From the NCBI GenBank assembly GCA_035084275.1, contig CM068757.1, forward strand, positions 8,122,001-8,186,000: a stretch of 64,000 nt of DNA, given 5' to 3'. The number at the start of each line of letters is the position of its first letter. Position 1 is the stretch's first letter. The notes under the pieces are model-generated. The model saw only the letters and a list, made by a program, of their open reading frames with translations, made no database searches and was not told where the DNA came from. The translations under genes and the position numbers were made by a program. This document shows, in pieces, positions 12,811 to 63,277 of the stretch. The stretch is from Hydrolagus colliei. Taxonomy: Eukaryota.

Positions 12811-14934
12811 GTTTTCCAACATAGAAGCAAATTAAATTAATCAGCAATAGGAATTTGCAGCAAGCGTAAGCTAAGTTTAGGTGAAATGTTACTGTAAGAA
12901 TAAACAATAAGCCACATAGAAAATTTTAAGCAATCCAGTAGACCCTTGCCGAACGCAGCAGTTACGTTCCTGTAGAACAGTGCACTCAGTAAAATCATGT
13001 TCGGTAAGCTTAATAAGTATTGTATTGTAATGGGAAAAAAGGGGTGAGAGGAATCCATCTACAGGCTATCCAACCTCAAGCCTCCAGGCACATCCACATC
13101 CGACCAATGCAAGGTACGTACTGAGGCAACTTACAGCTGGCTGGCCCGTTCATCACGCTCCCCAACTCGCTAGACAATAAAACAGCACCGTACACTACCA
13201 CAGCTTGGCTAAATTATTTTACCCTGGAAGTTTTAAGAGACTCTCTTCTCTCTTCTGTTTACCAGGTTGCGCTGAGGAATCATTGGACTTAGGCAGGAAC
13301 TGGCGGCATCCTCCCAAGTGTACATTACACGTGGAGGCTGGCGTCCTCCCAAATGCGCATATGCGCAAGTCCAGTCAGCTGAGAAATCATCGGATTTAAG
13401 TCGGGAGCTGCCATCGTCCTCCCGAGTATGCACTGCGCGCGGGGCCGGCGTCCTCCCAAATGCACATGGGGCCAGCCAGCGCGTATACACAAATTTTACT
13501 CGCGTTACGCAAAAAACTGCCTAATTTATTTCTTTGCATATAGGCAAATCCGCAGTCGAGAAAGTCGCGTTCGGCAAGGGTTGACTATGTAGTAAGTAGC
13601 ATGTGTTTAAAAAAGCTTGTTAAAAATTAAAATAGCTTTCAACCAGATAGTGCAATGCATCTCACGTCCACCATATATCCCTAAAATTACACAATTCAGC
13701 ACCCAGTGAGTTTAAGAAAATCATGTTTAATAAACAACAATTCAACCTCCAAACCCAGTTCTCACCCAGCTAGAAATACAATTTTAAGTTAGATTAACAT
13801 ATACAAGTAAAACATGGGTATTTCTAAAGTGTTTATAATCTGTACTATTATATCCAACCGTTCAAGCGAGACCGCAATATAATTGTGCTCTTTGGCACTT
13901 GCAGTGCTAACATACATTACATGGTTAATGATATTAACATGCAATAATCTGGACTAAACCCGTTGGGACACAATAGATGAACGTTTCAGCTAGATTTGCT
14001 TTCATGTTGTACCTACCAACAGCCATTCAAGATTTAAACAGCAATTTTCTTGTTACTTAAGTAATCTTTGCTGTCCCCAAGAGAAAATACGACATTTGGT
14101 TATTGCAGTAATTTGTAAATGTCATAGTGACTTAAGTTTTCTTGTGTTTTCAGTAATACAAATGGAGCCACAATTAGAGGCAGTTTAAGAAACCAGTCAA
14201 TAGCTGCTTGAATAATTGCCAGAAACTCACAATGTAAACCATATGAAATACTCAAAAAGTGATTTGTGTCCATTAGAATTTTCTACTCAGAACACTGAGT
14301 CTAAAGTGTTTGAGGTAAAATAAGGGTTCAACAACCCCCCTTCAGAATCCTGCTTATATATAAAGATGGTACAATGAAAATATCCCCCACTTCCCTTAGA
14401 AACATGCACAAGTCCAAGTTCACCCAGGGACACAATTCCACAAGTAACAACACTCTTTCGTAACCCATTCCTCATGTTTCAGGCAGTGTCAACAGGCTAT
14501 TTGGCCCCAGGAGAATGACAATTAAGACCAATTGGCCTTGCTCAATGTCCAGAAATGCAGAGTTTCCAGCAGCACCCACTGAAAAGCAATCAAGAGTAGA
14601 AATTCTGATTAATTTCCTCTCTGAAGCCCAAAGGCACCAAGGACAATCATAGCTCTCTTACTGGCTCCAGCCAAACCAGCTCAGAGACAAACCAAGAAAC
14701 CCCCCAATATGCACTGCTCAGTGAAATTTATTTTAATTATGGCCTCATTTAGTTCAATAGGAGCCAGAAATGATTTTGTGCACAAACTGAAGTCAATCAC
14801 AAAGACTATTCTTCGCTATCACACATAAGGCAGTCAACTGGACTCAGCTGTGAAACTACAGCACTAGCGAACTAGCTGTACAAAAACCAGCAAGAGTTCA
14901 CAAACCCAAATGCATCAAAATGCATCCCAGGCAT

Positions 14935-14940
14935 TTTAAT
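14935..14940 (-). terminator. Candidate poly(A) signal (ATTAAA) of the snoRNA host transcript
   Basis: ATTAAA about 90 nt after the acceptor ttctcttctag (15031), followed by 'tttgggtttgtg...ggtttttgt'. Confidence 0.5.
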
Positions 14941-15676
14941 GATTGGATGACCCAGTAAGGTGAAGTACTGAAAGACGACGGCTGTGAATTCATTTTGTCC
15001 CTGTATTGAATCCCTCTTCAAAGTTGTTGTCTAGAAGAGAAGAAAGGTTACAGATGAGGGGAAATTGACTCATTTATCATTCTTAGTTGGAATGTTAAAT
15101 CGAGAACTGGCAACATATGACACACCAAATGTTTTAAATAAACGCCAAACTGAACTTTTTGCTACTATTGGTCTGAACTCAAATGGACTGAGACAGAATG
15201 AGGTAGAAGGGAAAAGAGGAAAAAAAACAGCCACTATTCCCAATTACTGGAAAGTATGTTTGTAGATGATAGCCAAGTTCAGGGACAAATTGCATTATTT
15301 TTCCTAACTAATGAGAAATTATAAAGTGCAAAATTATTTTGGCCAGAATTAATAGTAGTATTCCCCCCCGAAGGCTACAGTTTTGAAGACCAAAGAAATT
15401 ACAAATAAACTAGAAGAAGCAAGTCATTTAAGCACTAGGGATCTGAGTCAGCAAAGTTTACATGTACTGAAACCAGGTCACCCAGACAGTTTTACATTCG
15501 AGGAAACTACAAGAATAAGTAGCCCTCATGCCCACCTGTTTAGCATTCCTGAAGACCCGTGGATTCAGAAATATTACCATGGAGCACTTTCATCTTCAGC
15601 TGTGAAAAATAATTTGATCAGTTAGCTTGCAACAAGACTCCTTCATTCCTACTTTGAATCAATAAAATAATCCAGA

Positions 15677-15745
15677 GCCATCAGTCAACGTAATAACAAT
15701 TTCATCACATGTATTATGAAGACCATCGTGTGAACATCATTTGTA
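15677..15745 (-). ncRNA. SNORD35: Box C/D snoRNA U35-like, copy 1 (most diverged)
   Basis: C box ATGATGT (15740-15734), guide TCACACGATGGTCTT, D'-position CATA, C' GTGATGA, D box CTGA (15684-15681). External stem AATCCAGAG/CTCTGGATT. Confidence 0.78.
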
Positions 15746-15776
15746 ACTCTGGATTGTCTCATATTTTGTCGCAAAG

Positions 15777-16130
15777 AATAATGATCCTTGCATCTTATAT
15801 AACAGCTTATTTTGTTTTCGACGTGCCTCAAAGAACTATACAGAATAAACTGTAAAATGAATTGACAGTATATTTTGTAGGTGAAAAATAACAGCCAATT
15901 GCATTAGCTATTTCATTGAAAGCTGTGGTTTGAAGTGACCAATTTTCTGTTAAGGAACTATTATCCCCAGAAACACAATCAACCAATCAACTAACAACCG
16001 GGTTTCTACTTACTGCTAGGTCAACAGAAGAGTGTGGAGAAAGGAAACTCGCCCAACCTTTTGCCCTGGTGGGAATCGAACCCAGATGTTTTGCTTGCGT
16101 GGCTTCCAACCACGATCTACATATGAACTA
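15777..16130 (-). mobile_element. Near full-length tRNA-derived SINE
   Basis: B-box-like GGGTTCGATTCC on the minus strand (about 16083-16072), family body, and L2-like tail ending at about 15777. Confidence 0.7.
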
Positions 16131-16820
16131 AGCACTTGAAAATTGTAGTTTATAAAATGAACAAAAATATATTATAGTGCCATTGTATAATACTACTTGT
16201 TGCATTGATATCGCGCCTTATCACACATTTTCGAGATGTCTCAAACAGCTTCATAGTAGACACTATAAGGTGAAACGACTGTATATTTTGCAGAAGAAAC
16301 TAATATTAAACTACTGAATTGGATACTACAATTTGAAATGATAAATAACAGAAGATTAATTACCAATTTTTATTTCCAACTGGCCCTCGTTTTAGTTAAT
16401 CTACAATAAAACAATGTATCTTTACAAATATGTCACTGCCGTAGCTGACAAAAGAGGGAGCCACTCTCAGTTTGTGGAAGCACAGATGTGTGATAGCTTG
16501 TATTTTCCCTGCTGATAGGTAAACAAGGTATGTATACCCACTCCTGATCATCATCAATATAACGGTCCGTAAAACTTGCATGCAATGAAACCAGGTCATC
16601 CAGACAGGTCAATACTCAGGACAACCACAAGATTAAGCCTTCACGCCCACCTGAACAAGTTGCTTAGCATTCCTGAAGACTTAGCATTTTGCAGATTCAG
16701 AATTGCTATGGATCACTTATCTTCAGCTGTAAAAAAACTAGCAGAAATAAAAACAATTTGATCAGTTACCTTGCAACAAGTCTCTTCCATTTCAACTTTG
16801 AAGCAACAAAACAATCCAGA

Positions 16821-16890
16821 GCCATCAGCTAATTTCATATAGAAATTTCATCACATTTATTATGAAGACCATCGTGAGAACATCATTTGT
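16821..16890 (-). ncRNA. SNORD35: Box C/D snoRNA U35-like, copy 2
   Basis: C box ATGATGT (16886-16880). Guide TCTCACGATGGTCT is complementary (one G:U) to the conserved 28S rRNA sequence AGACCGUCGUGAGA. C' GTGATGA; ends TTAGCTGATG with D box at 16828-16825, like mammalian U35 as recalled. External stem TCCAGAG/CTCTGGA. Confidence 0.88.
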
Positions 16891-17623
16891 AACTCTGGAG
16901 AATCTCAATGAATGCAGCAATCTAATGCGCACTTAAAAGCATGAGTACAGCATTATTTAAGTCTAATGTGGTATGAAATAATAGGAATGCTCCCATCAGA
17001 ATTAAAAATTAATCTAACCAGGTGTTTTAAGCAACGAGTAAATGTAAGAGGAAACTTTCGATCACCAGTTATTTAACCAGAGGTTACCATTGGGCAGCTT
17101 CAAAGCAGTTATAAAAACCATTTCCACAAATAATAATGAAATAAAACTGCCATGCAAGTCATCTATGAAAATACATTTGATTCTCTAATCAATGAACCTA
17201 ACCATTTATCTTGTCGCAAACTGACTAGGCATTTGAAAAAGCGTGCTTTAAAAAGAATCAAAAAGGGTATTAAGAGTTATTATGCAAGTGTCAACCCACT
17301 TATCTCACTTTGTGAAAGCGCAGGCGAGAGAGAGAGCTTGCATTTCTCACTGGTAGGAAAGCAAGTCCCATTATTGACGCCTGGGTCAGTAAACTCTACA
17401 TGCACTGAAACCAGATCACGCAACGATTTAATACTCGGCAAAACCACAAGATTAAGTAGCCCTCATGCTTACCGGAGCAAACTGCTTAGCATTCCCGAAG
17501 ACCCATGGATTCACAAATATCCTCTTCAGCTTAGAAAAACTGTCTGAAAACAAAAACAATTTGATGAGTTACCTTACAATAAGTCTCCTTCATTTCTACT
17601 CTGAATCAATAAGTCAGTCCAGA

Positions 17624-17693
17624 GCCATCAGCTAATGTCATATAGAAATTTCATCACATTTACTATGAAGACCATCGTGAGAACATCATTTGT
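17624..17693 (-). ncRNA. SNORD35: Box C/D snoRNA U35-like, copy 3
   Basis: C box 17689-17683, intact guide TCTCACGATGGTCT, C' GTGATGA, D box 17631-17628, external stem TCCAGAG/CTCTGGA. Confidence 0.88.
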
Positions 17694-18121
17694 AACTCTG
17701 GAGAATCTCAATGAATGCAGTGATCTAATGTGCACTTATAAGCACCTTTATTTAACATCATTAAAATTGAAAGCAACTTGCTTTTTATATTGTGTACTTC
17801 ACACGGGGCAGTGTCTTGGAACACTTAACACATAGTTTCTCTTACATACCTGGAGAACAGGTATCCAAGCCTTTCTGAAGAAATGGAGACAATCTGCAAT
17901 GGGACACTGCATTTCAGTATCTGCTTTGTAGCTCAGCCTAAAAAAAAGGAAATGACAAAAGTCAAATGTAAATACATTTTTAGTTTAGGATATTGCATCA
18001 CACCATCCAATGTAGAATTAAATAAACAAAATGTTTCAATCCAATTTATTTCAATCAAACAAAGTGTTTAAATGAGGGGTAAATGTAGGAGGGAACTACT
18101 GATAGGTAAGCAAAGTACATA

Positions 18122-18461
18122 CAGTAAAGGCCTGTTTATCCGTGACTCGATCAACCGGATTGCACCCCCGGAGCAATTCCCCATTCCAGCAATCGCGAGT
18201 ATGCTCACTCTGCGCACTTATTAAACTTACAAACTATGGGTTTTTAGCAGAACGGTAAAATAATTCTATTTTACCAAGTGTGCTTGAATCTTTATTGGTA
18301 AGTATCCATACCATATTGTTACTATTTAGTATATTATTAATATGGTATGTTTTAAAATAAGTAATTTTTTTGTGTTAGGTTTTCGGCAACTTGCCGCCCG
18401 ATTATCCGACAGTCAATTAGTCGACCCCCCCAGAGGCTGTCGGATAAACAGGCTTTTACTG
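18122..18461. mobile_element. Tc1/mariner-superfamily (pogo/Tigger-like) MITE, 340 bp
   Basis: 21-bp TIRs CAGTAAAGGCCTGTTTATCCG / CGGATAAACAGGCTTTTACTG (1 mismatch), flanked by TA on both sides. Confidence 0.85.
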
Positions 18462-18564
18462 TATATCCCTTTACCGATACCAGGGCTAGGTAAAGCTTAC
18501 ATATAACGATACCAGGTCACCCAGATAATTTAACACCCAGGGAATCCACAAGTAGCCTTCACGC

Positions 18565-19081
18565 TAGTGTCCGGCGATATATCATTATATTGGTATAATT
18601 TTTCATATTGATATCCCGATATTGGTAATGTGAATATATCGTATATCAAAAAAGTTTGGTATGAAAAAAAATCGGTATATCCACGAAATATCGGTATATC
18701 ATCAACATATGCCACGTTACAACATACAGCAAATATACAACCAACGGTTCAAATGTACTTGACGACACAACGCACACAAGAGCTTCAAGCGCCAAAGGGC
18801 TCCATCAACAACAACAAAAACAGTAACAACAAAGTTCAACAGACCTTGTCGCTGGCATTCCTGGGCGTAGAGCACATATCTGAATGCGTGCGCATCCCTG
18901 AATGCACACACATTCCCCTCCTTCCCTTCCCCCCAACCACCAAACACAATCAGATTTGCGCACAACCCTCCCAAGCCATTCATATGTAAAGGTTTGGAAC
19001 ACGAGTAATAAAAAACTGGTGATATCGATATGAGCCCACCGATATATTGATACCGGAAAAATTCAATATCAATGGACACTA
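18565..19081. mobile_element. Non-autonomous hAT-type DNA transposon, 517 bp
   Basis: TIRs TAGTGTCC / GGACACTA. Perfect 8-bp TSD CTTCACGC (18557-18564 and 19082-19089). CGATAT/ATATCG subterminal repeats at both ends. The empty site is visible in the paralogous unit at about 16638-16650. Confidence 0.88.
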
Positions 19082-19252
19082 CTTCACGCCCACCTGAACA
19101 GACTGCATCGCTGAAGATCCATGGATTCAAAATTGCCAGGGAGCACTTATCTTCATTTGTGAAAAAACTAGCTAGAAACCAAAGACAATTTGATCAGTTT
19201 CCCTGTAACAAGTCTCCTCCATTTCTACTTGGAAGCAACAAAATAATCCAGA

Positions 19253-19322
19253 GCCATCAGCTAATTTCATATAGAAATTTCATCAAATTTATTATGAAGA
19301 CCATCGTGAGAACATCATTTGT
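19253..19322 (-). ncRNA. SNORD35: Box C/D snoRNA U35-like, copy 4
   Basis: C box 19318-19312, intact guide TCTCACGATGGTCT, C' TTGATGA, D box 19260-19257, external stem TCCAGAG/CTCTGGA. Confidence 0.88.
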
Positions 19323-21489
19323 AACTCTGGAGAATCTCAATGAATACAGCAATTTAATGTGCACTTAAAAGCATTATTAAAGTCTAAAGTGGTATGAAAT
19401 AATCAGAATGTTTTCATTAGAATTTTAAATTATTCTAACCAGGTGCTTTAAACGAGGGGTAAATGTAAGAGGAAACTTTCTATTACCAGTTATTTAACCA
19501 GCTGTTGCCATTGGGCAGCTTCATCAACGAAGTTACAATAACTATTTCCACGTGTAAAAATGAAGCAAATCTGCCATGCAACTATTCTACAAAGTACATT
19601 TGATTCTTTAAACAACGAACCATATATCTTGCCGCAAATGAACTATTCGAAAAAGTGTATGTTAAAAAGGATTAAAAAAATGTAAAGTTATAAATACAAG
19701 TGTTAAACTAAAAAGTGTTTTGTTACACTTACAATGTACACTAGTGGTGCATTTTTAATGTACAACAACTTGCATTTATATCGTGCCCTTCAAGTGGGGC
19801 GGCGTCCCAAGAGCGCTTAACATATATCAAGCTTCTCATACATACCAGAAATAGGCATCCGAGCCTTTCTGCAGAAATGAGGACAACCTACAGCAGAGGC
19901 ACTACATTTCAGTGTTCAGCTTTGTAGCTCAGCCTAAAAAAGGGGAAAGCCAAATTTAAATATCTTTTTAGGTTAAGGATATTGGATTACATCATCTAAT
20001 ATTGTATGAAATAATCAGAATGTTTTCATTATGATTTTAAATTGTTCTGTCGTTCCTAAATGAGGGATAAATGTAAGGAGAAACTTTCTATCACCAGTTA
20101 ACCAGGCATATATTTTGTTACAATAAACTTGGCATTTGTCTAGTGTATTTTAGAAAAAAGGAATAACAAATGTTATTTTTGTATAACTAACATAGTTATT
20201 TTGTAGCAGAGTAAACGAATAAATAGTCTGCTAGATTTTTTAATGGATTCCAGCAGTTCCATCAATCCAATAGATACAGCAAGTGTTTTACCTGCTTTTT
20301 CAAAGCATTTTCTTAAAAAAAGGTGAAATAGTGAGCTGATTATCCTACCATTTCAGTTACCTTCGAACTGAAATCAAACTATTTAGAATCAAACTAATTC
20401 TAATGAAAACAAACTGCTTAATTTCTCCAGAAAGAGATTTCATAGGTTATTACAGCTGAACACTACCATTGTTGGTACAAATCTAGTGTAAAATCATCCA
20501 AAGACTCCATTTAGCAGCACTCGAAGTGACCTTGATATACACAATGCTACCAAAAAAATTACTGAAATCTACAATATAATCAGCCAAAGGCATACAATGA
20601 AACTTCTTGTACTGCCTTACTCAGCTAAACTGAAGAAATGAGCGTTTGAAGGATAAAGGATCAACAATGATTCTTGAGAGCTGTCAAGCACTCAATATGA
20701 ACTTATGTCATGTTGCATGCACGCCAGAACAGGTTTTCACGCTAAGGGTTTGATTAATATCTTATGTGGTTTCCAGGCTTATCGAGGTTAACTAATCAAG
20801 AAATGCCATTAGTGGATGCCTGCTAGCAAACAATTAACCCCATTACCTACCTAAACAATGAACCAGGAGCATGTCCCTCTTGGCTTGGCTACCAGATGTG
20901 TCCAATTGCACTTCAGAAAAAAAAACTTCGAACATTGCAACTACTATGTTGGGACGTCCTCTCGACGTGAAAGGCGTTCTACAAATGTAATTGTGTTGTT
21001 GCAGTACGATGTAGTAGGTCACCTACACACAATCTTCCCTCAAACAACATTGAAGGAGCTGCAATAATACTGAACCTGAAACTCATCCCTCTCGAGAAAC
21101 TGGGCTAAGAAGCCAAAGGTTCAATGAACCATTGTGTCTAAACACACCATTTTTAAGTGTTTTGCTGATTGCTAACCACATGGTCATTTAACGACATGGC
21201 AATGTAATTATTTGGCATTGGATTCCAGCAGTTTGGCTTCAGTCACCACCAAAAAGAAAACTGCAGTTTGATGTTTCAAAAGTAAGAAGCCAAACATCAA
21301 AAGATCAAGCTCTCTAATCTTATCCAATGATTGATTGAGCAATAAAGACAAGGAAGGGGCAAATGTTGCCAATCTGTCAGGGTGACAATAAGAGCACTTC
21401 ACCTGATTCCAATATCCCAGGCTAGCAATCGGGAAAGAAAACAATCTCTGATTGTAATCTGAAATGGAAATCCACAAAAATATCCACAT

Positions 21490-21620
21490 AATAATCCTTT
21501 CATTTGATATAGCACCTTAGGTCACTGTTGAGATGCCTCAAAGCGCTTCATGGGATTCACTATAAAGTGAAATAACTGTATTTTATGGCTGAAACCCGGA
21601 AGTCAGTTCCGCAAAGCAAC
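21490..21620 (-). mobile_element. SINE 3' part
   Basis: 'ataataatcctttcatttgatatagcacc...gagatgcctcaaagcgcttca' is the reverse complement of the family tail. Confidence 0.7.
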
Positions 21621-23499
21621 ATTCCATAATTTTTAAATAAGATTCCTAATCCACCTGAGTGTTGAAGGGGGGTGTGTGTGTGTGTGTTTGCAATGGAGGG
21701 TGGGCAGCAAAAATTCTTGCTTCTCTCAATTTTATCCGTTTTCGGTTCAAAGACACTTACCTTCACACCGTTCAGCAAGCCTCTATCTAGTCTCCATTGT
21801 TCTTTGACCTTGGTGGCCAAAAAGCAATTCTGCAGGAAATAAGAATGACGAGTTTAGCCTTTGGTATTGCTATTGTTCTGTAAAATGAAACTTTCCTCGT
21901 TTAAAATACTTCTGATGCAAAAACACTTGTTTTAAAGAGCACTGCAGTTGTACATTGTAAGTATGCCGCTGCAATTGTATTGAAGCTGCCCATCGATCAT
22001 TATCAAACAACGTTCTCATTAGCTGACACACTTGTAAAGACACAAGACTGGTATTAAAATAAGCTTGTGCTGCCCCATCAAGGTAAAATGAGTTAGCTCC
22101 TTCCTCTGGATAAGTAGGTATATTTTTATGGTTTAAAATGCAAATTAAAAAGCATTAGATGTGGTCCATGGAGGCATTGTACATTTCAGCTCAAGTAATA
22201 CTGATAAAACTACCAACAGAAACACACATACACGAGAACAGCTTCACGATTGTGAACCCAGTAACCCTTTAAAAAAATATATATTATGCATGGGTATATA
22301 TCTATAATAATATATATATATTAACTAAAGCTGCTCAATTGTCCAGTTATTCTCGTTTTTAAGTTCTCATTTTCCCCAACACGTGTCTGTTTGTCTCTCT
22401 CTAGTCCATACCCATTCCAGCAGCGCCATCTTCTGTGAAACTGCTCGATCCACGAGGTCTGCCTTGTCTCCACGTGGTTCTGCCTGTGCTGAACGGGGGA
22501 GAAGGTCAGTGAGTTTCAGAACTTATTAGGCCGAGAGATCAAATGAGGGAGAGGAAATAACAATGATCATTATTATAAAAAGATCAGCCCGAGGGCTCAA
22601 AGTGAAAGGTTTAAAATGAGCTGCGGGTAACCAGTGATACTGGCTCTTTTTTTTTTTGTTGTTGATGAAAGATATAAAAATATACATGCAAACAAGATCT
22701 TCCAGAAACTTCCAACATCACTCAACCGCCGACGGTGGAGGAAAAGCGTCAGAGAATCAAACTTTTAAAACTATTTAAATAGCACAAGCCGGGTCTTATA
22801 ACTCCCAATAACTAAGAACCAGCTCAGGCTCGAGTTTTCCCCCAGAGACAAAAAGGAACTTCGAATCGAATGCAAGAATTAAGACTCTTATTATTAAACT
22901 CTAACCAATTTTATTTTAAAATCCCCCCCCTACAAAAAGGCAATGATTGCGTTATTACATGCTTGGTGACTGTCACTAACTTCCAAGTGTGGTTTCCCCG
23001 AGACTCCATAAGAAGTAAACTTGTGACTAAATTACATTATGTAAATGACGCAGGGTTTGGTCTCTCAAGTCTAGAAAGCTATAATATCAGTAAAATAAAG
23101 TAACCTCAGGCTTTGATTTCTCTCTCTCGCTCTCCCTGCAATAATATATAGAATAAACCTTCGGTTTGGTCTCAGGGACTACATCAGGTGTGAAATAATC
23201 AATCATAAAAAATATAAACATAACCTCAGGTGGGATCTCTTGACTGTATAACATAAAGTAACCTGAAGCTTTGTATCTATTATATATATTACCTATCTAT
23301 AGATATATAATAATGTATAACATACATGACACAACACGTATCGAATAACCTAAAGCTTTAACTCTTAACTATATATATATATACAATATATAAAAGACAG
23401 GACACAACACACACAAATATATAATGTATAACTGGATATATAACATCAATATAAAGTTACCTCAGGCAGAGCTCCTGGAGCAGCTGCTGCTGCTTCCAA

Positions 23500-24050
23500 T
23501 GGCGCCGAGAGAGAGAGAGGTGGGGGGTGGACGGGGGGGGAGGGGAGCTGCTTCCGGTCCGGTCCATCACCACGTGTCCAGGGTTCACGCCCCCAATTGG
23601 GCGGGTTTGAGCGGGCGCCTCGCGATTTTTTTTAAACAACCTTTACTCGCACTATTTTTTGTTACATATATTATATATATATATTAAAAAAGCACTCGCC
23701 GTTCCCTTTGTTGCTGTTTTTTTTTAAAAAAGGCTGCTGCCCTAAAAATAACAATTATCATGGTTATAATAACATTGGGCTACTTTGGGCTCGAACATTG
23801 GGCTACAAACGTATTGCGGGGTTTACTTCCGGTCTGGTTCACCCCTCCCACCCCCGCCCCACCACGCCTCCTCTCCCGGTTGCTAAGGAGGCCGTTCCCA
23901 TCCGGGCCTTGACTTCAGGCTCTTCTCTCGTTTCCTCGTTAAACTCCCACCTCCTCTCTCTCCCCGGCCGTGGGGGGCTTGAGTTGATGGTTTTAGTGGA
24001 AGAAAGGAGAGGCCGAGCTCCCGCTGCCCGAGCCACTGAGACCATGACTC
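23500..24050. promoter_or_regulatory. CpG-enriched bidirectional promoter (RIC3 / snoRNA host)
   Basis: ETS-type CTTCCGG at 23551-23557 and ACTTCCGGT at 23825-23833; E-box CACGTG at 23571-23576; CCAATTGG at 23593-23600; GC box CCCCGCCCC near 23851. Lies between the TOP start (-) and the RIC3 ATG (+). Confidence 0.7.
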
Positions 24051-24158
24051 TCTCCGCTTTCCAAAAGGTGGCCCTGGTCTCCTGTGTCGTCCTCTGTTGC
24101 TCCGTCGTCTTTCCTAAACTCTTCCTGGACCGAGGGAAGAGGGGCGATCCGAAGGAGG
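24044..24158 (+). CDS. RIC3: RIC3 acetylcholine receptor chaperone, exon 1 (signal/anchor segment)
   Basis: accATG; MTLSAFQKVALVSCVVLCCSVVFPKLFLDRGKRGDPKE resembles the RIC3 N-terminus. Donor G|GTAAGG, phase 1. Confidence 0.92.
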
Positions 24159-32758: not shown

Positions 32759-32961
32759 CTAACCCCAATCGATTTCCTCCCAAGATGCGTCCAAAAGCTT
32801 CTGACATCAAATCCAGCAGGTCAGCCCCTTCCCAGTTCAACAATGCAGAAGCTGTGGTCAAAGCCAAAGCTGTTGGAGGAGGCAATAAAAACATTATGGG
32901 CCAGATCATCCCTATTTACGGATTCGGAATATTTGTGTACATCCTATATATCCTCTTTAAG
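32759..32961 (+). CDS. RIC3: RIC3 exon 2 (includes transmembrane helix)
   Basis: ttttgcag| ...NIMGQIIPIYGFGIFVYILYILFK |gtactg. Hallmark RIC3 motif; phases 1/0 fit. Confidence 0.95.
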
Positions 32962-55254: not shown

Positions 55255-57409
55255 CTGGAAAGAAAAAAAAGCATGTGCAAAATTGTTAATTCTGCAACAA
55301 CAAAACAATACAATTTTTTTTAGCAGGACAAAGGCTATTTCAAACATCATAATAATTATGCATTTGATTTAGCGCTTCACAAAATATACTGTAATGTGAA
55401 TTGACTGGATATTTTGTGGGCGAAGGGTGGCAGCCAATTGTCCCACACACAATCGTGGATTGAGATATAGGGTGGAAATATTGCCTGAATATCCAGCAAC
55501 TCAATACATCAATTGCAAGTTTTAAAAAAATGGCATATTTTGTCTCAGCAATGTTCTCTCTTCCTGTTACTTGTTGGTGGAGTTTGCATTATAATTAGTG
55601 TAAATCCTGATGTACTGTGCTACAGGGCTCTTGGGAATGAAACACTGCACAATGTGTGATCTCCGCTGTGATTGACGGTGTTGGGAAACCCAGATGCTCT
55701 CACCACAGGAAAGGATAGAATCTGGAAGATAAAATCCCCCAGGTACTGTTTGTGTATCTTTCATTAGCTCCTTCCAGAGACAGAAGCTTGTGAGTAAGTT
55801 TGTCTGTCAGCCAGGGAGTGAAGCATAATATCTAATAAACCTTGTATTTGATGAAACACCTTATCATGTCGCTGAGATGGTTCAAAGCGCTTCAGAGGAA
55901 TTTTATTGTGAAATGTAGAGGCTGTGTATTCATACGCAAACACAGTAGCCAATTTCCACTGCAGCATTTGTCCCATAAGCAGCCACAAAGTGAATAACTG
56001 ATTTTATCTGCTTCATACAGGGCAGGTGAAGGTAGGTAGGAGAAAAGAATATCAAGCTGAAGCAAATGTTTCCTGTAAGCAAATACTTAAGGTTAATACG
56101 GCACTCATTGTTGGAGTCTTGTTTTGCCAGTGTCTTCCTGACTGGATGAATAAGGTAAATCTTGTCATTGGGTAGGCAGATGCTCAGGGGTAACCAGCCT
56201 TTGGAAGGAAGATTACTGCTCAATGCTAGGATTAACAACACAGAGCAATGATTAACCACTTTGAAAAGCAGTAAAGAGCAAGTAGAGCTGAAAAGCGGCC
56301 CATGACATTGAGACAATTGCTCTAAAACATCTCTAACAGTGTTTAAATGTCGATTCGCAAATAGTTATTCAGGGACTGATCTATCTCTATAGTCTCGTCC
56401 ATTAAACTATTTCCATCCATTCTATAAATTTAATCAAAACATCAGATTTATCATATGTCGGGTTGTGGAGTGGGAGGTTGGCAGTGAGAGAAGGGAGGAG
56501 AAACAAAAGCTCAAACAGCCTGCCTCATATCCTGTGTGGAAGTTTAATACTGATTGATGTTGACGTTCAAATATTGGATTGTCTGCATGTGGGGAAGTTT
56601 ATCAATGCAGACAGTCTGCACTGTACACCGACAACAGTAATGTATGCAATACGGCAAAGGCTGCAGGCCTTTTTAAAGTGGGTGAAGGAATGAGATTCTT
56701 ATTCTTGATCAGTTTAGCATTGTATTGTGTGTTCATGTGTGCATGGTCAAAGAAGAACTTTGACCATGAATTTGTGGAAGCAGTTAGTACATTATGCCCC
56801 AGCAGGATTGCACACACATGCACACACACGCGTCGCACACACTTCCTGCCGGGAAAGTGGACATGCTGCTCTGTATCAGGAAATTGCTCTTTGAGACAAG
56901 ACTGCATGGTTTAACCCTGTAGCCCTGAGCTCTCCTCAGAATTGTTTTGGAACTACAGTATACGGTCTAAATGTCAAATGCAGAAATTCTTTGGAAAATA
57001 AGTTAAATTCCATCGATAATGATTTCAGAATCATGTTTTGTTGTGCAATGTTTCTCTTCACTCTAGATCTTTAGAACAATATACAGGTAATTGGACAACA
57101 TGTCACAGAGGGAGTCACAGCAACAAAATTCCATATATAGAGCGCCTTTCACGTCAGGAGGACTTCCCAAGGCGCTGGTTTGGGAGATTGAGACGTTTTG
57201 ACATGACATTATGCAAGGCTTTCCCCAGTGTTTGATCTGGGATTATTTGCTTCCCATTTCCAAGGGTTGTGAGTGTTTTGACAATAAAAAAGGTAGAAGT
57301 ATTTTGAAATGCTACACAGTTACACCTCACCATATTGAACATCATGAAGACAGCAAAATGGAGAATCACTACATATATATATACATATATATGCATAAAT
57401 ATACACAAC

Positions 57410-57441
<32 letters not shown>

Positions 57442-57470
57442 TATATATGTGTGTGTGTATGTGTGCAGAA

Positions 57471-57785
57471 GCCCTGTAGCTCAGTAGTTAGAGCACTCGC
57501 CTTTCAAGCGAGAGACCTGGATTCATTTCCAGGCAGGACAAAACCATGGGCATGTTTCCTTATTCCTCATGCTTAATAATAATCACACAAGAAAAAAACC
57601 AATAATAAATTGGTCATTTAAATCCACGACTGTTTGTGATAATCTGCTGTGCCAATTGGCCACCACGTTTCACCCACAAATATACAGTCATTTTACAGTA
57701 TCTTCTGTGAAGCACTGTGCGACGTCAAGAAGACGTAAAAAGCGCCACATCAAATGCAAATATCAAAGGATTATTATTATTATTT
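57471..57785 (+). mobile_element. Full-length tRNA-derived SINE (about 315 bp)
   Basis: Head folds like a tRNA (A box TAGCTCAGTAGTT; arm CTCGC-ctttcaa-GCGAG; CCTGG/CCAGG T-arm), then the family body and an L2-like tail with (ATT)n. Confidence 0.85.
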
Positions 57786-59052: not shown

Positions 59053-60246
59053 CTAAAGGAAATGACATATTTTTTAATTATATATATATATATGTATATA
59101 TTATCTTTTCAGAAACTGATAACAGATATTTTAACAAAATTATGATGAAAGTTTAAGTTGCACATCTGGCAAACAGATGGCAACAACTAACCACTATTAA
59201 AAAAACATAAACATGACTATTCACATTCAATGGAAAAGGTTGTTGCAATTATAACTCACTGGCTGTTTTGTTTTGAAATCTGCCCTTTGAAAATGTTTTA
59301 AACTGAGATTCGCAATTAGTGCAAAAATAGTAAAAGCACAAAAAATGGAAAACCCACATTTTTGACCCCCAATGTCAAACTGCAACATCCAACAAATTTT
59401 ACCTGCAGAGAGATTGCAGGGTCTCAGAAGGTTTAGTTTACTACAAGAAGACTCATGATAAAAGCTTGCTTCAAACAATTCCTGAAATGCTGTTTCAATA
59501 AGATGCACTTTGAATCCTCCAGATACGTTTGATCGTTGGCTCACAACAAACTTAAGGGAAGTTTCTGAAGGCATCCAAGTGATTTCTGTCAGCAAACTGA
59601 ACTGAGAAGAGTAGTTACAAGGGAACGAGCTGACTGGTAAGTGCTGTGAGCAGTACACAAGGCTGGAGACTGCAAATGTTTGGGAGATGGGGAGAAATGC
59701 TGACTACTGCTAGGACTACTCGTTACAGCTATAGCTCAGTCGGGGATGTGTATTTCAGTCTAAATGCTGGAACCAGCATTGCCTTTCCGTTTACGGATTC
59801 ACACAAAAGAGCAAACCCAAGATTTGTCAAGCTGAATATTCTTGAGCCATGCTCTCAAAAGGGAGGCACGAAAGTGAAGGTCAGGCAGTGGCTGGAGCGT
59901 TCAATAGACAGTAGGAATCTAGGACTTGTCAATTTCCACACCCACTTCTTTCTATGCTCACAAGAACAAATAAGATCAAATTGTTGAGACAGCTGGCTTG
60001 GTTACAGTGGTCTCTGACTGTAGCCTGTTTGTGGTGTTGCCTGTTACGTACTCTAGGCTTGAACTACACAACTTTCCCCCTGGATTTTACCAACTGAAAT
60101 GCCCCACATCAACCTTCACTGATTTCTTAGGGAATGGTTACGGCTGCACTGACAAAGGCCTAGCAATCGGGTGCTGCTAACTTGCTTGCCTACCGAACAC
60201 AGTACTGTACTGTACTTGCAAACCTAACTCTCAGAACAGAACTTAC

Positions 60247-60361
60247 ATAACATATGGCCGCCAGCTCCTGACGCAAGTTGCTTGCCTCTAAGCTTGAACT
60301 TCCCTTTTCAGGATTCATTCCATTATCGTACACTGTGAACTTCGTGCCCATTAAATTTGAT
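60247..60361 (-). CDS. TUB: Tubby exon
   Basis: (R)[38 protein letters not shown]; 115 nt. Confidence 0.96.
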
Positions 60362-60604
60362 CTGCAAAGCAAATGGATCACAATTTGCTGAAGAAGTCTC
60401 ACACACACGCACACTGAACTCAGTCGATGTTATTGTTCTAAACCACAATGGAACCTTCTATAAGCAGCGACAGTATCAGTTATCCGGCCTAACCGTACAG
60501 TAGAATTCCACTTCTAACATGGCATTCACAATAGCACCATGTGTTTCTGACCTCAGTCACAATCACAAGAAGTATAGCAGCGGTGACTTATGGGACTGGC
60601 TTAC

Positions 60605-60717
60605 CTAAGTTTGCCAACAAAGCTCTCTCCGCCCCGCGACAGGTCAGTGGGGTCGACAGAGATGAGGTAATTTGATGTCTTGCTCTTCTTGCGTTTCCTT
60701 CCTGCCAACAGGAACAC
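60605..60717 (-). CDS. TUB: Tubby exon
   Basis: [37 protein letters not shown](R); 113 nt. Confidence 0.96.
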
Positions 60718-60760
60718 CTGGAGAATAAGGAGGGAAGATACCGTCATCACAGTCACAGGA

Positions 60761-61078
60761 ATAATAATAATTCTTGCATTTGTTATAGCATTTTTTACGT
60801 TTTTTAGACGTCTCAAAGCACTTCACAGAGTATACTGTGAAGTGAATTGACTGTAGATTTGTGGGTGAAATGTGGCAGCCAATTATGCACAGCAGTGTTC
60901 CACAAACGTTCGTGGATTGAAAATGACCAATTTCATTTTTGTGTTTTTTTTGGAGGGATTATTATTAGGCACGTGGAGTAAGGAAATTTGCCCAAGGTTT
61001 CACCCTGACCTGCCTGGATTTGAACACAGATCTCACATTTGTAAGGCGAGTGCTCAAACCACTGAGAAACAGGACTCC
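60761..61078 (-). mobile_element. Full-length tRNA-derived SINE, same family as 57471-57785
   Basis: Minus-strand head 'gtcctgtttctcagtggtttgagcactcgcctt...gttcaaatccaggcagg', then body and tail. Confidence 0.82.
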
Positions 61079-61833
61079 CCAAGCAACTTATTCAGAATTG
61101 ATTTATTCAATCCTCACCAGAAAGAAAGCAGGAAAACGCAACACACACTCGTTGGCCTTTCAACTTTACCATTTATTGGTAAATACCGGTAAATCTCCTG
61201 ACAAAACAGTCACCTTAGTTATAGTAAACATCCGTGAAGCATTTTGAGATTTCTTTAACAAGGGAATATACAGCTGCAAAGATAATAAACAGTAGAATTT
61301 GTAGAGAATCTCTCTAAAAAAATGGTTTGAATGCAAACTCGGGGGATGGGGAGAGGGAGGAAATGTTCCTTTTTCTCCAAAGACAATATAATATAATATC
61401 TTCCCTACTCCAAGCAAGGTTCTAGTACCTGCAGCTGGGAAATCCCAAACCAACTGGAGTGTTCTGGAGTGTTTGTTCACTTTGGTTTACAGCCCTGCTT
61501 TAAGAGGCTCTTTGATCTTCAAACCACTTCTGTTTCTGCTTTCACAACCACACTTAACTTGCCTGATTATCACTATGTCTCTTAGCATTTTAAAGAGCTG
61601 GATTGTGTCTTCTTCCCCCGCCAATGAGAACCAGAACAAAGCAATAAATCCAGCAATCACCTGGTTAAAAACCTTCTTAAGCCCCCATTAATATTTCATT
61701 GTCTTTTTGAAGATAGGGCACCCAAAATTACGCACAGTTTACAAATGGGATACACTGTGTACCAAGGCAAATGTAGGTTGAGATCTGAAGGATGTTTCTA
61801 ACTTGCAGTAAAGCTCTCGGATTTATTTCTGAC

Positions 61834-62025
61834 CTTTTTCCCATCATCTCTTTCCAAGTGGAGGTAGTAGGTGGGATACATTCCCCGATCCATCCCCTTC
61901 TTGTCCCTTGTGATGCGGCATTTGACGGTGACTCCCTGCGGAGATGGTCTCAAAGAAAACTCCTCGAGGTCATCGACATCTATCAAAGCATCGTTGCACG
62001 GAGGGGTTGAGACAGAGGCTGCTTC
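61834..62025 (-). CDS. TUB: Tubby exon (start of tubby domain)
   Basis: [64 protein letters not shown]; 192 nt. Confidence 0.95.
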
Positions 62026-62074
62026 CTGGAAAACAAGTGGAAGTTCAGCTCTGTATCAAGGAAATATTGTTAAG

Positions 62075-62270
62075 TATCCCCTCCCTGGCTTCCTTCAAGT
62101 CCCGCCTCAAGACCCTCCTCGTCCCATCGGTTACCCCAATTCCCCCCACTTCCTCTCCCCCACCCCATCCCTCATCCCTGACCCGAGCTCGGGTCTGAAA
62201 CAACATCTGTCCAGTGCCTTGGAACATCCTCCTGACGTGAAAGGCGCTATACAATGTTGTTGTTTTTGTA
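62075..62270 (+). mobile_element. L2 LINE 3' end
   Basis: 'PSLASFKSRLKTLL', pyrimidine tract, and tail 'gtgccttggaacatcctcctgacgtgaaaggcgctatacaatgttgttg'. Confidence 0.85.
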
Positions 62271-62689
62271 TGTTGTAAGCACTAAAATACTCCCATCATC
62301 TTTTCTCTGTGTTTCTTAGGCTTGTCAGTGCTGGAGATTGTAACTGTTAATCTTTTCCGTCCAGTGGAAATATCTAATGAAGTCCAGACAAGGAGTAAAG
62401 CATCTGTATGACCTCAGGATATAAACTGATGCCGTTCTGTATCACACTTAAACTTCTGCCTCAACAACAACAACTTGTTTTTTTATATCATCTCCATGCT
62501 GAACGGTCTCTCAAAGCGCTTCCCGATAAAGGACCTCATCAACCTATGCTGGATTTCAAACCAGATCTCAGCCATATACGGACAGTGTGCATTACCAGTC
62601 GCGCAGTTTACCCTTTTCAAAAGAATATGATTGAGGGTCACAATGAAATTAATTTCTTGTGTTGAATCAGCTCTGTATCTACCTCTCAC

Positions 62690-62811
62690 CTTATTGGATT
62701 TTTTACTAGAAGCGGAGCCAGGCCTGGTGTTGCTGTTCAGCTGAGAGGAACTGGAGCTATCTTCATCTTCCTCGTCCTCCTCCTCATCAAAGTTCATGCT
62801 GCTGGAAATGC
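62690..62811 (-). CDS. TUB: Tubby exon
   Basis: (G)[40 protein letters not shown], characteristic of TUB; 122 nt. Confidence 0.94.
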
Positions 62812-63277
62812 CTGCAGAGGTCGAACACATTGGAGATTTCAAACTTAGATCACCTAGAAATCCAGGCTGCACTCAATCCCACATCCCATTGCAAAAGGAG
62901 CACCCATTAACTATGATGCCTTATGCCACATGTTAAAACATGTACAAATATAACTGCTCGGCTCAATGCAGCTGCCTTAGGAATGAGAAGTCTGTCTTTC
63001 AGTTATAATCAGTTCAATGATCGTAGTCAATTAATTGGTAGCTGTCCTCAGGAAGTGCTCGATGTGCAAGTCAACCAAAATATATTGGGATCTAATTTGC
63101 TCGAGATTATAATGGGATTTCTTAACAAGGAGCCCAATTTATACAAATGGAGAAGCGCACAGCCACAGGAATTCTAATGGGATTACTCATTAAGCAATCC
63201 CACCATGTACCATGATTTAGACCCCACTGTACGCACCAGGCTTCTCGTTCAGCAACAGAACAGTGTCAATGATTTAC

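What the first reader, a model, noticed from the sequence alone, without database searches (positions are those of the whole stretch)
14915..23519. Hidden 5'TOP non-coding host gene carrying a four-copy SNORD35 (U35) array, head-to-head with RIC3
Seen: a TOP-like start, a chain of short GT-AG exons with no long ORF, an ATTAAA end, and four C/D snoRNAs, one per intron, with D boxes about 80-100 nt upstream of a 3' splice site. Established: this is the architecture of SNHG/GAS5-type hosts, and mammalian SNORD35A/B are hosted in RPL13A and RPS11, not beside RIC3. Inference: U35 moved into a divergent RIC3 transcript and was amplified there, giving a lineage-specific host that seems dedicated to one snoRNA family. 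Protein-centred annotation would miss it.
Basis: partly seen in the sequence, partly recalled or inferred. Interest (0 to 1): 0.85.

Follow-up and report, generated by a model that had tools for sequence, protein, structure and literature searches.

The report
Four-copy U35 snoRNA array beside RIC3
Four copies of a small RNA that guides one methylation of ribosomal RNA sit in a row next to the RIC3 gene of a cartilaginous fish, apparently inside the introns of a non-coding carrier gene: an ordinary arrangement found in an unusual place.

Summary
The core observation holds. Four box C/D snoRNAs lie on the minus strand (19331-19247, 17702-17618, 16899-16815, 15753-15671). Rfam's SNORD35 model is their best match, but at 25-30 bits, below its gathering score of 36. 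Box C, a 16-nt guide identical to the SNORD35 consensus (one change in copy 4), box C', box D and a 10-12 bp end stem are present in all four. Copies 1-3 are 96-99% alike while their flanks are 70-83% alike. Each D box ends 81-87 nt before an AG that opens a 64-87 nt segment closed by GT. Three proposed exons have stops in all frames. A promoter-like pyrimidine run lies 524 bp from the RIC3 ATG on the other strand. Splicing, the TOP start and the claimed move from RPL13A/RPS11 therefore stay untested. The kind is known: non-coding, single-family snoRNA hosts built by cassette duplication, such as zebrafish FP101887 (PMC7668251). The scan noted this same stretch once before (s1-902632), not on other DNA.

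The parts
19247..19331 (-). U35/SNORD35-like box C/D snoRNA copy 1, including the outer stem (85 nt; expected mature form about 68-72 nt)
   Evidence: Rfam SNORD35 28.8 bits, E 0.0032. Boxes and stem. The D box ends 85 nt before the acceptor of B1.
17618..17702 (-). U35/SNORD35-like snoRNA copy 2 (85 nt with outer stem)
   Evidence: Rfam SNORD35 29.9 bits, E 0.0016. Fold z -4.09. The D box ends 84 nt before the acceptor of B2.
16815..16899 (-). U35/SNORD35-like snoRNA copy 3 (85 nt with outer stem)
   Evidence: Rfam SNORD35 29.0 bits, E 0.0029. It differs from copy 1 at 1 of 85 positions. The D box ends 87 nt before the acceptor of B3.
15671..15753 (-). U35/SNORD35-like snoRNA copy 4 (83 nt). 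It has one change in the D' guide and a diverged stretch before box D.
   Evidence: Rfam SNORD35 25.2 bits, E 0.037, local match. Boxes and a 12-bp stem are intact. It differs from the others at 9-10 of 83 positions, not significantly fewer than in the spacer.
23461..23520 (-). Proposed exon 1. It opens with a 14-nt pure pyrimidine run (23520-23507), has no ATG, and its donor is GTAACT.
   Evidence: The start site itself is not tested.
23521..23640 (-). Promoter-like stretch: CCGGAAG at 23557, CACGTG at 23576, CCAAT and a GC box near 23600, TCGCGA at 23625. GCGCCAT follows the tract at 23505.
   Evidence: Motif positions and window-wide counts: 2 of the 4 CCGGAAG sites and 1 of the 2 TCGCGA sites of the 64-kb window lie within 23400-24100. 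The motif names are recalled.
22412..22488 (-). Proposed exon 2. The acceptor tract is 0.82 pyrimidine and the donor is GTATGG. It holds an ATG at 22429.
21761..21829 (-). Proposed exon 3 (acceptor tract 0.76 pyrimidine, donor GTAAGT)
19846..19933 (-). Proposed exon A1, upstream of the intron that holds copy 1. It has stops in all three frames.
   Evidence: Unique in run X1 by depth.
19094..19171 (-). Proposed exon B1, downstream of copy 1
   Evidence: acceptor tract 0.65 pyrimidine, donor GTGGGC
17850..17937 (-). Proposed exon A2, upstream of the intron that holds copy 2
   Evidence: (repeat families D15 and D16)
17473..17543 (-). Proposed exon B2, downstream of copy 2
   Evidence: acceptor tract 0.71 pyrimidine, donor GTAAGC
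16651..16737 (-). Proposed exon B3, downstream of copy 3, with an alternative acceptor at 16726. It has stops in all three frames.
15536..15599 (-). Proposed exon B4, downstream of copy 4. It has stops in all three frames and the weakest acceptor (0.59 pyrimidine).
14915..15030 (-). Proposed last exon, with ATTAAA at 14940-14935 and a GT-rich stretch after it. Further signals lie at 14737-14727.
   Evidence: AUUAAA is used by 18.4% of elephant-shark non-coding cDNAs (PMC3466250 table). The end itself is not tested.
24044..24158 (+). RIC3 exon 1 (coding part), on the opposite strand. The ATG lies 524 bp from the proposed exon-1 start.
   Evidence: Translation. Its start resembles RIC3 representatives such as P0051 and P0019. 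Pfam alone found nothing in this short piece.
32759..32961 (+). RIC3 exon 2
   Evidence: Pfam PF15361 RIC3, E 1.7e-16, 61.4 bits against a cutoff of 28.9. 85 representatives at E up to 0.001.

Best explanation
The region holds four paralogous genes for a U35 (SNORD35-type) box C/D snoRNA, the guide for 2'-O-methylation of the large-subunit rRNA cytidine that is Cm4506 in human 28S. Each copy lies in its own intron of a minus-strand, non-protein-coding RNA polymerase II transcript of about 8.6 kb and ten short exons. That transcript probably starts at a pyrimidine tract about 0.5 kb from the RIC3 start codon, on the opposite strand, and ends after ATTAAA near 14.9 kb. After splicing, the snoRNP proteins bound to the C/D kink-turn protect the snoRNA while exonucleases trim the intron. 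The spliced exons are a by-product with only a short (about 34-codon) upstream-type frame. The array grew by tandem duplication of an intron-plus-exon cassette and was later stretched by transposon insertions.

Shown: the four snoRNA units, their conservation relative to the flanks, their geometry relative to AG/GT signals, the lack of any long frame, and the RIC3 neighbour.

Inferred: transcription, splicing, the start, the end, and methylation of the target.
For: - Rfam: SNORD35 is the best family for all four units. Three still reach E 0.011-0.021 when the whole 64 kb is searched.
- The 16-nt guide equals the Rfam consensus in 3 of 4 copies; copy 4 has 1 change.
- Box C plus guide occurs 4 times, against 0 in 100 shuffles.
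- End stems are 10-12 bp.
- Copies 1-3 differ at 1-3 of 85 positions, against 23-37 of 134-135 flank positions; Fisher p 1.7e-6 to 8.8e-5.
- Mean identity by segment: snoRNA 92%, spacer 76%, exon B 55%, downstream intron 55%.
- The distance from stem end to acceptor is 75, 74, 77 and 71 nt, and a CTGAT-type branch-like motif is kept in 3 of 4 spacers, CTCAT in the fourth.
- AG and GT are kept at all four B segments.
- A1, B3 and B4 have stops in all three frames. 0 of 9 ORFs of the region hit Pfam.
- Promoter-type motifs cluster just upstream of the pyrimidine tract.
- Four distinct flank contexts are present in an independent-looking 60x DNA data set.
- A C/D scan validated on the four copies finds no other credible snoRNA in the gene.
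Against: - No hit reaches Rfam's gathering score: 25.2-29.9 bits against 36.
- No RNA run was available, so nothing shows transcription or splicing.
- Acceptors after the snoRNAs are only moderate: pyrimidine fractions 0.65, 0.71, 0.76 and 0.59. Only 1 of 4 passes a strict definition, and B4 fails even at 0.60. Three of the four B donors are the weak GTGGGC.
- The four copies are paralogues, so their shared geometry is not four independent observations.
- Copy 4 is not significantly better conserved than its spacer, p 0.17-0.25.
- Pure pyrimidine runs of 14 nt or more are not rare: 19 on the minus strand of the window.
- CpG observed/expected at 23400-23599 is 0.48, close to the window mean of 0.41.
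- X1 contigs break inside copies 1-3, so their order rests on the assembly.
Confidence: 0.6

Rival explanations
1. The snoRNAs are real and intronic, but the exon chain is partly wrong. In this reading they belong to a longer or differently started transcript: another lncRNA promoter, or untranslated exons of a gene whose coding part lies outside 14.9-23.5 kb. The link to RIC3 would then be mere proximity, not a shared promoter.
For: - Exons E1-E3 and the last exon rest on single, unduplicated splice-like signals.
- Donor-like and acceptor-like strings are frequent: 5.81 and 1.31 per kb on the minus strand.
- Pyrimidine runs are not rare.
- Further poly(A)-like signals lie 200 nt beyond the proposed end.
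Against: - No Pfam-recognisable ORF in the region, 0 of 9. No LIM-like motif anywhere in the window.
- Promoter-type motifs cluster exactly upstream of E1.
- E2, E3 and the A exons have the best acceptor tracts of the set, 0.76-0.88.
Confidence: 0.2
2. The copies are made without splicing. They would come either from their own promoters or by endonuclease cutting of a long unspliced precursor, as in plant and yeast snoRNA clusters.
For: - The yeast and plant U35 homologues are, from recall, in polycistronic clusters.
- The splice signals here are only moderate.
- PMC13736004 mentions endonucleolytic routes for some intronic snoRNAs (passage).
Against: - In vertebrates nearly all snoRNAs are intronic and only a few have their own promoters (PMC3349704 passages).
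- The 71-77 nt spacing to an AG, the kept branch-like motif and the kept GT after each short segment would have no reason to persist through 17-45% divergence of the surrounding sequence.
Confidence: 0.08
3. The array is a relic: duplicated U35 pseudogenes that are no longer expressed. The working U35 of this species would sit elsewhere, for example in rpl13a or rps11.
For: - Scores are below Rfam's threshold.
- Copy 4 has drifted in its 3' half and has a guide change.
- There is no expression evidence.
Against: - Copies 1-3 keep every box, the guide and the stem, with 1-3 changes in 85 nt, while the adjoining 134-135 nt carry 23-37 changes. That pattern needs purifying selection, or conversion confined to the snoRNA.
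- PMC3349704's criteria for a gene are met: intact boxes and antisense element, flanking inverted repeat, intronic position. The last criterion is met only conditionally.
Confidence: 0.07

Closest known systems
SNORD35 / U35 (Rfam RF00211; human SNORD35A in RPL13A and SNORD35B in RPS11, guide for 28S-Cm4506)
   Same: - Box order C - guide - D' - C' - D.
- The 16-nt guide is identical to the Rfam consensus.
- By my reading of the alignment, the guide is placed so that its tenth base lies five positions before the D' box.
- Target and hosts as in PMC8393311.
   Different: - It is 13 nt shorter than the model: 4 nt missing between box C and the guide, and 9 nt missing in the middle. It therefore scores 25-30 bits, under the 36-bit gathering score.
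- The D' box reads CAUA, where the consensus has CAGA.
- It sits beside RIC3 in an apparently non-coding host, not in a ribosomal-protein gene.
- There are four tandem copies.
Zebrafish FP101887 host gene (SNORD52/SNORD202 family), PMC7668251
   Same: Both are poorly annotated, apparently non-coding multi-exon hosts whose introns carry many related snoRNAs of one family: there, 10 SNORDs in 11 exons, 9 of them related. In both, family members diverge in one of the two guides (section 10 read in full).
   Different: A different snoRNA family, species and locus. Expression was shown there by RNA-seq and is not shown here. Here there are four copies and no unrelated extra snoRNA.
5'TOP non-coding snoRNA host genes of mammals (GAS5, UHG/SNHG1, U17HG and other SNHGs). 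The names and the TOP property are recalled, not taken from a call.
   Same: Short, poorly conserved exons without a long frame, one snoRNA per intron near the 3' splice site, and a pyrimidine-tract start.
   Different: Those hosts usually carry several different snoRNA families. Here the TOP start is only a sequence candidate.
Tandem exon-intron snoRNA arrays of imprinted loci (SNORD115/116, SNORD113/114). Recalled, not taken from a call.
   Same: Amplification of a unit made of a non-coding exon plus an intron with one C/D snoRNA.
   Different: Those arrays hold tens of copies of orphan, tissue-restricted snoRNAs. This one holds four copies of a canonical rRNA guide.

Membership tests
SNORD35 / U35 (RF00211) | Reaches the curated Rfam gathering score (36 bits) | tested here: not met
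   Scores are 29.9, 29.0, 28.8 and 25.2 bits, with no hit in gathering mode. The shortfall comes from 13 missing positions in variable parts of the model. SNORD35 is still the best-scoring family for every copy; the next best overlapping matches score 20.1 and 18.9 bits.
SNORD35 / U35 (RF00211) | Antisense element for the Cm4506 site directly upstream of the D' box | tested here: met
   16 of 16 guide positions equal the Rfam consensus in copies 1-3, and 15 of 16 in copy 4. Pairing with this species' own 28S could not be tested because no rRNA is in the window.
Box C/D snoRNA gene, by the criteria of PMC4053766 and PMC3349704 | Box C RUGAUGA with at most 1 mismatch, box D CUGA, and a terminal stem of at least 4 bp flanking them | tested here: met
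   AUGAUGU (1 mismatch), CUGA, and contiguous stems of 10, 10, 10 and 12 bp in 4 of 4 copies. The criteria were read.
Box C/D snoRNA gene, by the criteria of PMC4053766 and PMC3349704 | An expressed, stable RNA of about 70 nt bound by fibrillarin and the other core proteins | not testable with these tools
   No RNA run holds the stretch.
Non-coding 5'TOP snoRNA host gene (SNHG/GAS5 type) | A spliced, polyadenylated Pol II transcript | not testable with these tools
   Only DNA contigs were available. GT-AG signals and ATTAAA are present.
Non-coding 5'TOP snoRNA host gene (SNHG/GAS5 type) | snoRNAs lie one per intron, near the 3' splice site | tested here: met
   On the proposed exon chain, 4 of 4 copies lie in separate introns of 674, 306, 735 and 1051 nt. 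The third figure follows from the acceptor at 16737; one search computed 731 with its earlier acceptor estimate. The D box ends 81-87 nt before the acceptor. This holds only if the exons are real.
Non-coding 5'TOP snoRNA host gene (SNHG/GAS5 type) | No long open reading frame; exons less conserved than the snoRNAs | tested here: met
   Stops occur in all three frames of A1, B3 and B4. The frame from the ATG at 22429 ends at codon 6 of A1, by exon-by-exon bookkeeping. 0 of 9 ORFs hit Pfam. Exon B is 55% identical across cassettes, against 92% for the snoRNA.
Non-coding 5'TOP snoRNA host gene (SNHG/GAS5 type) | Transcription starts at a C within an oligopyrimidine tract | tested here: inconclusive
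   A 14-nt pyrimidine run at 23520-23507 begins 37 nt downstream of the first base of a CCGGAAG site. However, 19 such runs exist on this strand of the window, and no capped 5' ends were available.
Bidirectional (head-to-head) gene pair with RIC3 | Two divergent start sites less than about 1 kb apart | tested here: inconclusive
   RIC3 is on the opposite strand with its ATG at 24044, 524 bp from the proposed start at 23520. Neither start site is mapped.

The most novel reading that the evidence does not exclude
In this chimaera-like lineage the U35 guide has left ribosomal-protein introns altogether. Methylation of the Cm4506-equivalent site would then depend on a dedicated TOP-type lncRNA that shares a bidirectional promoter with RIC3, and copy 4 would be acquiring a new box-D guide. 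Because all four copies score below Rfam's threshold, standard annotation would report U35 as missing from the genome.
Probability: 0.25. Interest if true: 0.45.

Novelty: new member of a known kind. Interest (0 to 1): 0.3.

Why it matters
It adds a cartilaginous-fish example to the known picture that snoRNAs stay conserved while their hosts change. It also shows a concrete annotation gap: all four copies fall under Rfam's SNORD35 threshold, so pipelines that use gathering scores would miss this guide for a conserved rRNA methylation. If RNA data confirm the host, the locus would be a compact case for studying two questions: how intron-plus-exon cassettes duplicate, and how the second guide of a duplicated snoRNA drifts. 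It does not open a new kind of biology.

Tried and rejected
- Rfam at gathering threshold over the whole window found only a tRNA-like hit. E-value mode was needed to see the four copies. Over the whole window, E-value mode added nothing but AT-rich miRNA look-alikes beside the tRNA-like element.
- RNA evidence: the look-up of sequencing runs returned one holder, not on record as RNA. Laid on 14900-20800, it proved to be about 60x DNA contigs, so it says nothing about expression.
- One metagenome scan with the box C plus guide string found 0 contigs.
- Scan notes: nothing for SNORD35, U35, rpl13a or rps11.
- Literature: searches for snoRNA plus RIC3 (6 papers, none on a host gene judging by titles and abstract starts), snoRNA plus shark plus host gene, snoRNAs plus host genes plus Callorhinchus (1 paper, on transposons) and snoRNA plus elephant shark gave no description of this locus. 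That is the basis for 'not found in print', and it covers open-access text only.
- PMC6984369 (Xenopus) does not mention SNORD35 in its main text. The 'U35' matches in PMC8210301 were U354.
I did not ask for them. They may already show where U35 sits in non-mammals.
- My strict acceptor definition was met by only 1 of 4 B acceptors. I report the graded result rather than the favourable one.
- My first C/D scan missed the four known copies because of a 2-nt offset limit, so its negative was worthless. The widened scan recovers them. Of its 4 other candidates, 2 are the C' box paired with the branch-site CTGA, 1 ends inside exon A1, and 1 (16554-16467) has a 5-bp stem, lies 867 nt from the acceptor and is, by my reading, not kept in the paralogous cassette.
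- A LIM-motif search for LMO1, the human neighbour of RIC3 from recall, found nothing in the window.
- A tandem-repeat search of the promoter and intron 1 found only short simple repeats.
- I considered dating the duplications from flank divergence but rejected it, because I have no substitution rate from any call.

Full report
WHAT IS THERE. A gathering-threshold Rfam scan of all 64 kb gave one match, a tRNA-like element at 57470-57541, and no snoRNA. In E-value mode on 14500-24000, the four best of 15 listed matches were all SNORD35 (RF00211) on the minus strand, at 17619-17694 (29.9 bits, E 0.0016), 16816-16891 (29.0, E 0.0029), 19248-19323 (28.8, E 0.0032) and 15701-15745 (25.2, E 0.037, a local match). 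The family's gathering score is 36. Three of them remain at E 0.011-0.021 when the whole window is searched. The alignments show why the score falls short. The units lack 4 nt between box C and the guide and 9 nt in the middle of the model, while the guide CUCACGAUGGUCUUCA equals the consensus at 16 of 16 positions in three copies and at 15 of 16 in the fourth. I take the units as U35-type guides on the strength of the guide, the boxes and the stem, and I record that formal Rfam membership is not reached.

THE snoRNA UNITS. With their outer stems the units span 19331-19247, 17702-17618, 16899-16815 (85 nt each) and 15753-15671 (83 nt). All four have box C AUGAUGU, box C' UGAUGA and box D CUGA. 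All four also have a contiguous end stem of 10-12 bp starting 3 nt from box C. Folding z-scores are -1.8, -4.1, -2.4 and -3.5. The 24-nt box C plus guide string occurs exactly 4 times in the window with up to 3 mismatches allowed, against none in 100 shuffles. These features meet the working criteria for C/D genes that I read in passages of PMC4053766 and PMC3349704. A table row in PMC8393311 gives the family's target and mammalian hosts: 28S-Cm4506, with SNORD35A in RPL13A and SNORD35B in RPS11. A legend in PMC5454292 and a passage in PMC12330743 agree. Pairing with this species' own 28S could not be checked.

CONSERVATION. Repeat finding shows a duplicated cassette with spacings of 1144, 803 and 1629 nt. 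Aligning it by segment gives these mean pairwise identities: 92% for the snoRNA (96-99% among copies 1-3, 86-87% to copy 4), 76% for the snoRNA-to-acceptor spacer, 55% for the following exon-like segment, 57% for the 60 nt upstream and 55% for the 110 nt downstream. Copies 1-3 differ at 1-3 of 85 positions, while their flanks differ at 23-37 of 134-135; Fisher p is 1.7e-6 to 8.8e-5. Selection, or conversion confined to the snoRNA, has therefore acted on the snoRNA and not on the exons. Copy 4 is different. Its 9-10 changes in 83 nt are not significantly fewer than the 13-15 of 71 in its spacer (p 0.17-0.25). They cluster between box C' and box D, leaving the boxes, the stem and all but one guide position intact. 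It is either drifting in an unused second guide or decaying.

THE HOST MODEL. Reading the minus strand and locating the ends by script gives this exon chain:
- E1 23520-23461
- E2 22488-22412
- E3 21829-21761
- A1 19933-19846
- B1 19171-19094
- A2 17937-17850
- B2 17543-17473
- B3 16737 (or 16726)-16651
- B4 15599-15536
- a last exon from 15030, with ATTAAA at 14940-14935

All internal segments are AG/GT-bounded. Each snoRNA falls in its own intron (674, 306, 735 and 1051 nt). The stem ends 75, 74, 77 and 71 nt, and the D box 85, 84, 87 and 81 nt, before the next acceptor. A branch-like CTGAT about 25 nt before the AG is kept in 3 of 4 spacers and reads CTCAT in the fourth. PMC13736004 cites Hirose and Steitz 2001 for the dependence of C/D processing on position relative to the branch point. 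The figure of roughly 70-80 nt before the 3' splice site is my recollection.

STRENGTH OF THE SPLICE SIGNALS. The signals are moderate:
- Acceptor pyrimidine fractions are 0.65, 0.71, 0.76 and 0.59 for B1-B4, against 0.71 for the confirmed RIC3 exon-2 acceptor and 0.76-0.88 for E2, E3, A1, A2 and the last exon.
- Three of the four B donors are GTGGGC.
- With a 75% tract rule only 1 of 4 snoRNAs is followed by an acceptor-then-donor pair, against 155 of 20000 random positions. With 65%, 3 of 4 are, against 276 of 20000. B4 fails even at 60%.

Because the copies are paralogues, these are not independent trials. What counts is that AG, GT and the spacing survived divergence that erased about 45% of the exon letters.

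CODING POTENTIAL. A1, B3 and B4 have stop codons in all three frames, and E1 has no ATG. The ATG at 22429 in E2 (context CAGAAGATGG) is in phase with an open E3 and meets a stop at codon 6 of A1, or codon 8 of A2, so the frame is about 34 codons. This was worked out exon by exon; I built and searched no joined sequence. None of the 9 ORFs of 70 aa or more on either strand of the region matched Pfam. A C/D scan that recovers the four copies finds no other credible candidate in the gene, and Rfam finds none. The host does look dedicated to one family, with the caveat that H/ACA snoRNAs were sought only through Rfam.

START, END AND NEIGHBOUR. RIC3 is on the plus strand. Its exon 1 starts at the ATG at 24044, and exon 2 (32759-32961) matches Pfam RIC3 at E 1.7e-16. 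Later exon-like ORFs near 44.2 and 45 kb gave no Pfam match; I assign them to RIC3 by eye, from their resemblance to representative P0006. A tubby-family gene lies convergent to RIC3 at 60-63 kb. The proposed E1 start is 524 bp from the RIC3 ATG. Just upstream of the 14-nt pyrimidine run lie CCGGAAG (23557), CACGTG (23576), CCAAT and a GC box (about 23600) and TCGCGA (23625), with GCGCCAT at 23505. Two of the window's four CCGGAAG sites and one of its two TCGCGA sites fall within 23400-24100. This is what a TATA-less housekeeping or bidirectional promoter looks like, by recalled motif names, but it is not proof. Pyrimidine runs of 14 nt or more occur 19 times on this strand of the window, and CpG observed/expected at 23400-23599 is 0.48, against 0.41 for the window. 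ATTAAA is a plausible end signal: AUUAAA serves 18.4% of elephant-shark non-coding cDNAs (PMC3466250 table). Further signals lie at 14737-14727.

INDEPENDENT DNA. The single public holder, X1, is a DNA data set of about 60x whose contigs total about 1 Gb. The 8 longest pieces listed (12,402 more not shown) match 14900-20800 with 0-3 other letters each. The five substitutions and one insertion all lie in proposed introns. Contigs end inside copies 1-3, as expected where identical words collapse, and one contig spans copy 4. Four distinct flank contexts are thus confirmed, but the order of copies 1-3 rests on the assembly, and X1 may be the sample the assembly came from. Bins at 15688-16278, 18052-19233 and 19628-19824 have depths of 10^4-10^5. 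These are transposons that stretched the array, and one is a 360-bp element with 31-nt inverted ends at 18112-18471.

WHAT COULD NOT BE DONE. A metagenome scan found nothing. The scan's notes hold nothing on rpl13a, rps11 or U35 in this genome.

COMPARISON AND NOVELTY.
- The abstract of PMC13736004 states that across vertebrates snoRNA sequences are widely conserved while the exact host association is less stable.
- PMC3349704 states that snoRNA genes can sit in different host genes in different species, and that overlooked hosts are common.
- PMC7668251 (section 10, read in full) describes zebrafish FP101887, an apparently non-coding host of 11 exons with 10 SNORDs, nine of one family, some with one guide degenerate.
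- Another note of this scan reports SNORD10 in BRD2 in this genome and its relatives, against EIF4A1 in bony vertebrates (s1-138835; not checked by me).
- A third note calls the genome chimaera-like (s1-138678; not checked).
- Searches for RIC3 with snoRNA, and for shark or elephant-shark snoRNA hosts, found no description of this locus.
- Host lists in closed supplements may bear on this.

I therefore class it as a new member of a known kind. The one practical point is that all four copies fall below Rfam's threshold, so routine annotation would miss them.

VERDICT.
- My confidence is about 0.85 that copies 1-3 are working U35-type genes.
- It is about 0.7 that they are processed from introns of a spliced non-coding minus-strand transcript.
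- It is about 0.5 that this transcript starts at the pyrimidine tract next to RIC3.
- For the whole statement it is 0.6.
- Interest is 0.3.

Noticed in passing
window 18112-18471: A 360-bp element with 31-nt inverted ends (87% complementary) sits in the intron between B1 and A2. Its depth in run X1 is 10^5, so it is a very high-copy MITE-like transposon.
   Followed up: partly
window 15688-16278, 18560-19080 and 19628-19824: Further stretches have depths of 10^4-10^5 in X1 and lie inside the host's introns. The one at about 16150-15990 (minus strand) looks tRNA-derived by eye. These insertions account for the unequal cassette spacing.
   Followed up: no
window 57364-57541: A tRNA-like element (46.9 bits, with imperfect stems) follows a TA/CA-rich stretch that gives sub-threshold miRNA look-alike hits. 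It is probably the head of a SINE rather than a tRNA gene.
   Followed up: no
window 60190-62872, minus strand: Tubby-family exons (Pfam Tub and Tub_N) lie convergent with RIC3. From recall, this is the same gene order as TUB-RIC3 in human.
   Followed up: partly
window 22429, minus strand (exon E2): An ATG in a good context (CAGAAGATGG) opens a frame of about 34 codons that would end in the first cassette exon. It looks like the short upstream-type frame of other non-coding hosts, and could instead be a micropeptide.
   Followed up: partly
window 15671-15753, minus strand (copy 4): The stretch before box D differs from copies 1-3 at most positions, while every box and the stem are kept. It is either a new second guide or relaxed drift. 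No rRNA was at hand to look for a target.
   Followed up: partly
window 23270-23258, 23230-23221 and 23110-23101, minus strand (intron 1): Three further donor-like strings resemble the exon-1 donor (..CCTGAG|GTTA.. and ..CTTCAG|GTTAC..), set in AT-rich repeats. They could be alternative donors or remnants of a duplicated first exon. Tandem Repeats Finder did not report a long-period repeat there.
   Followed up: partly
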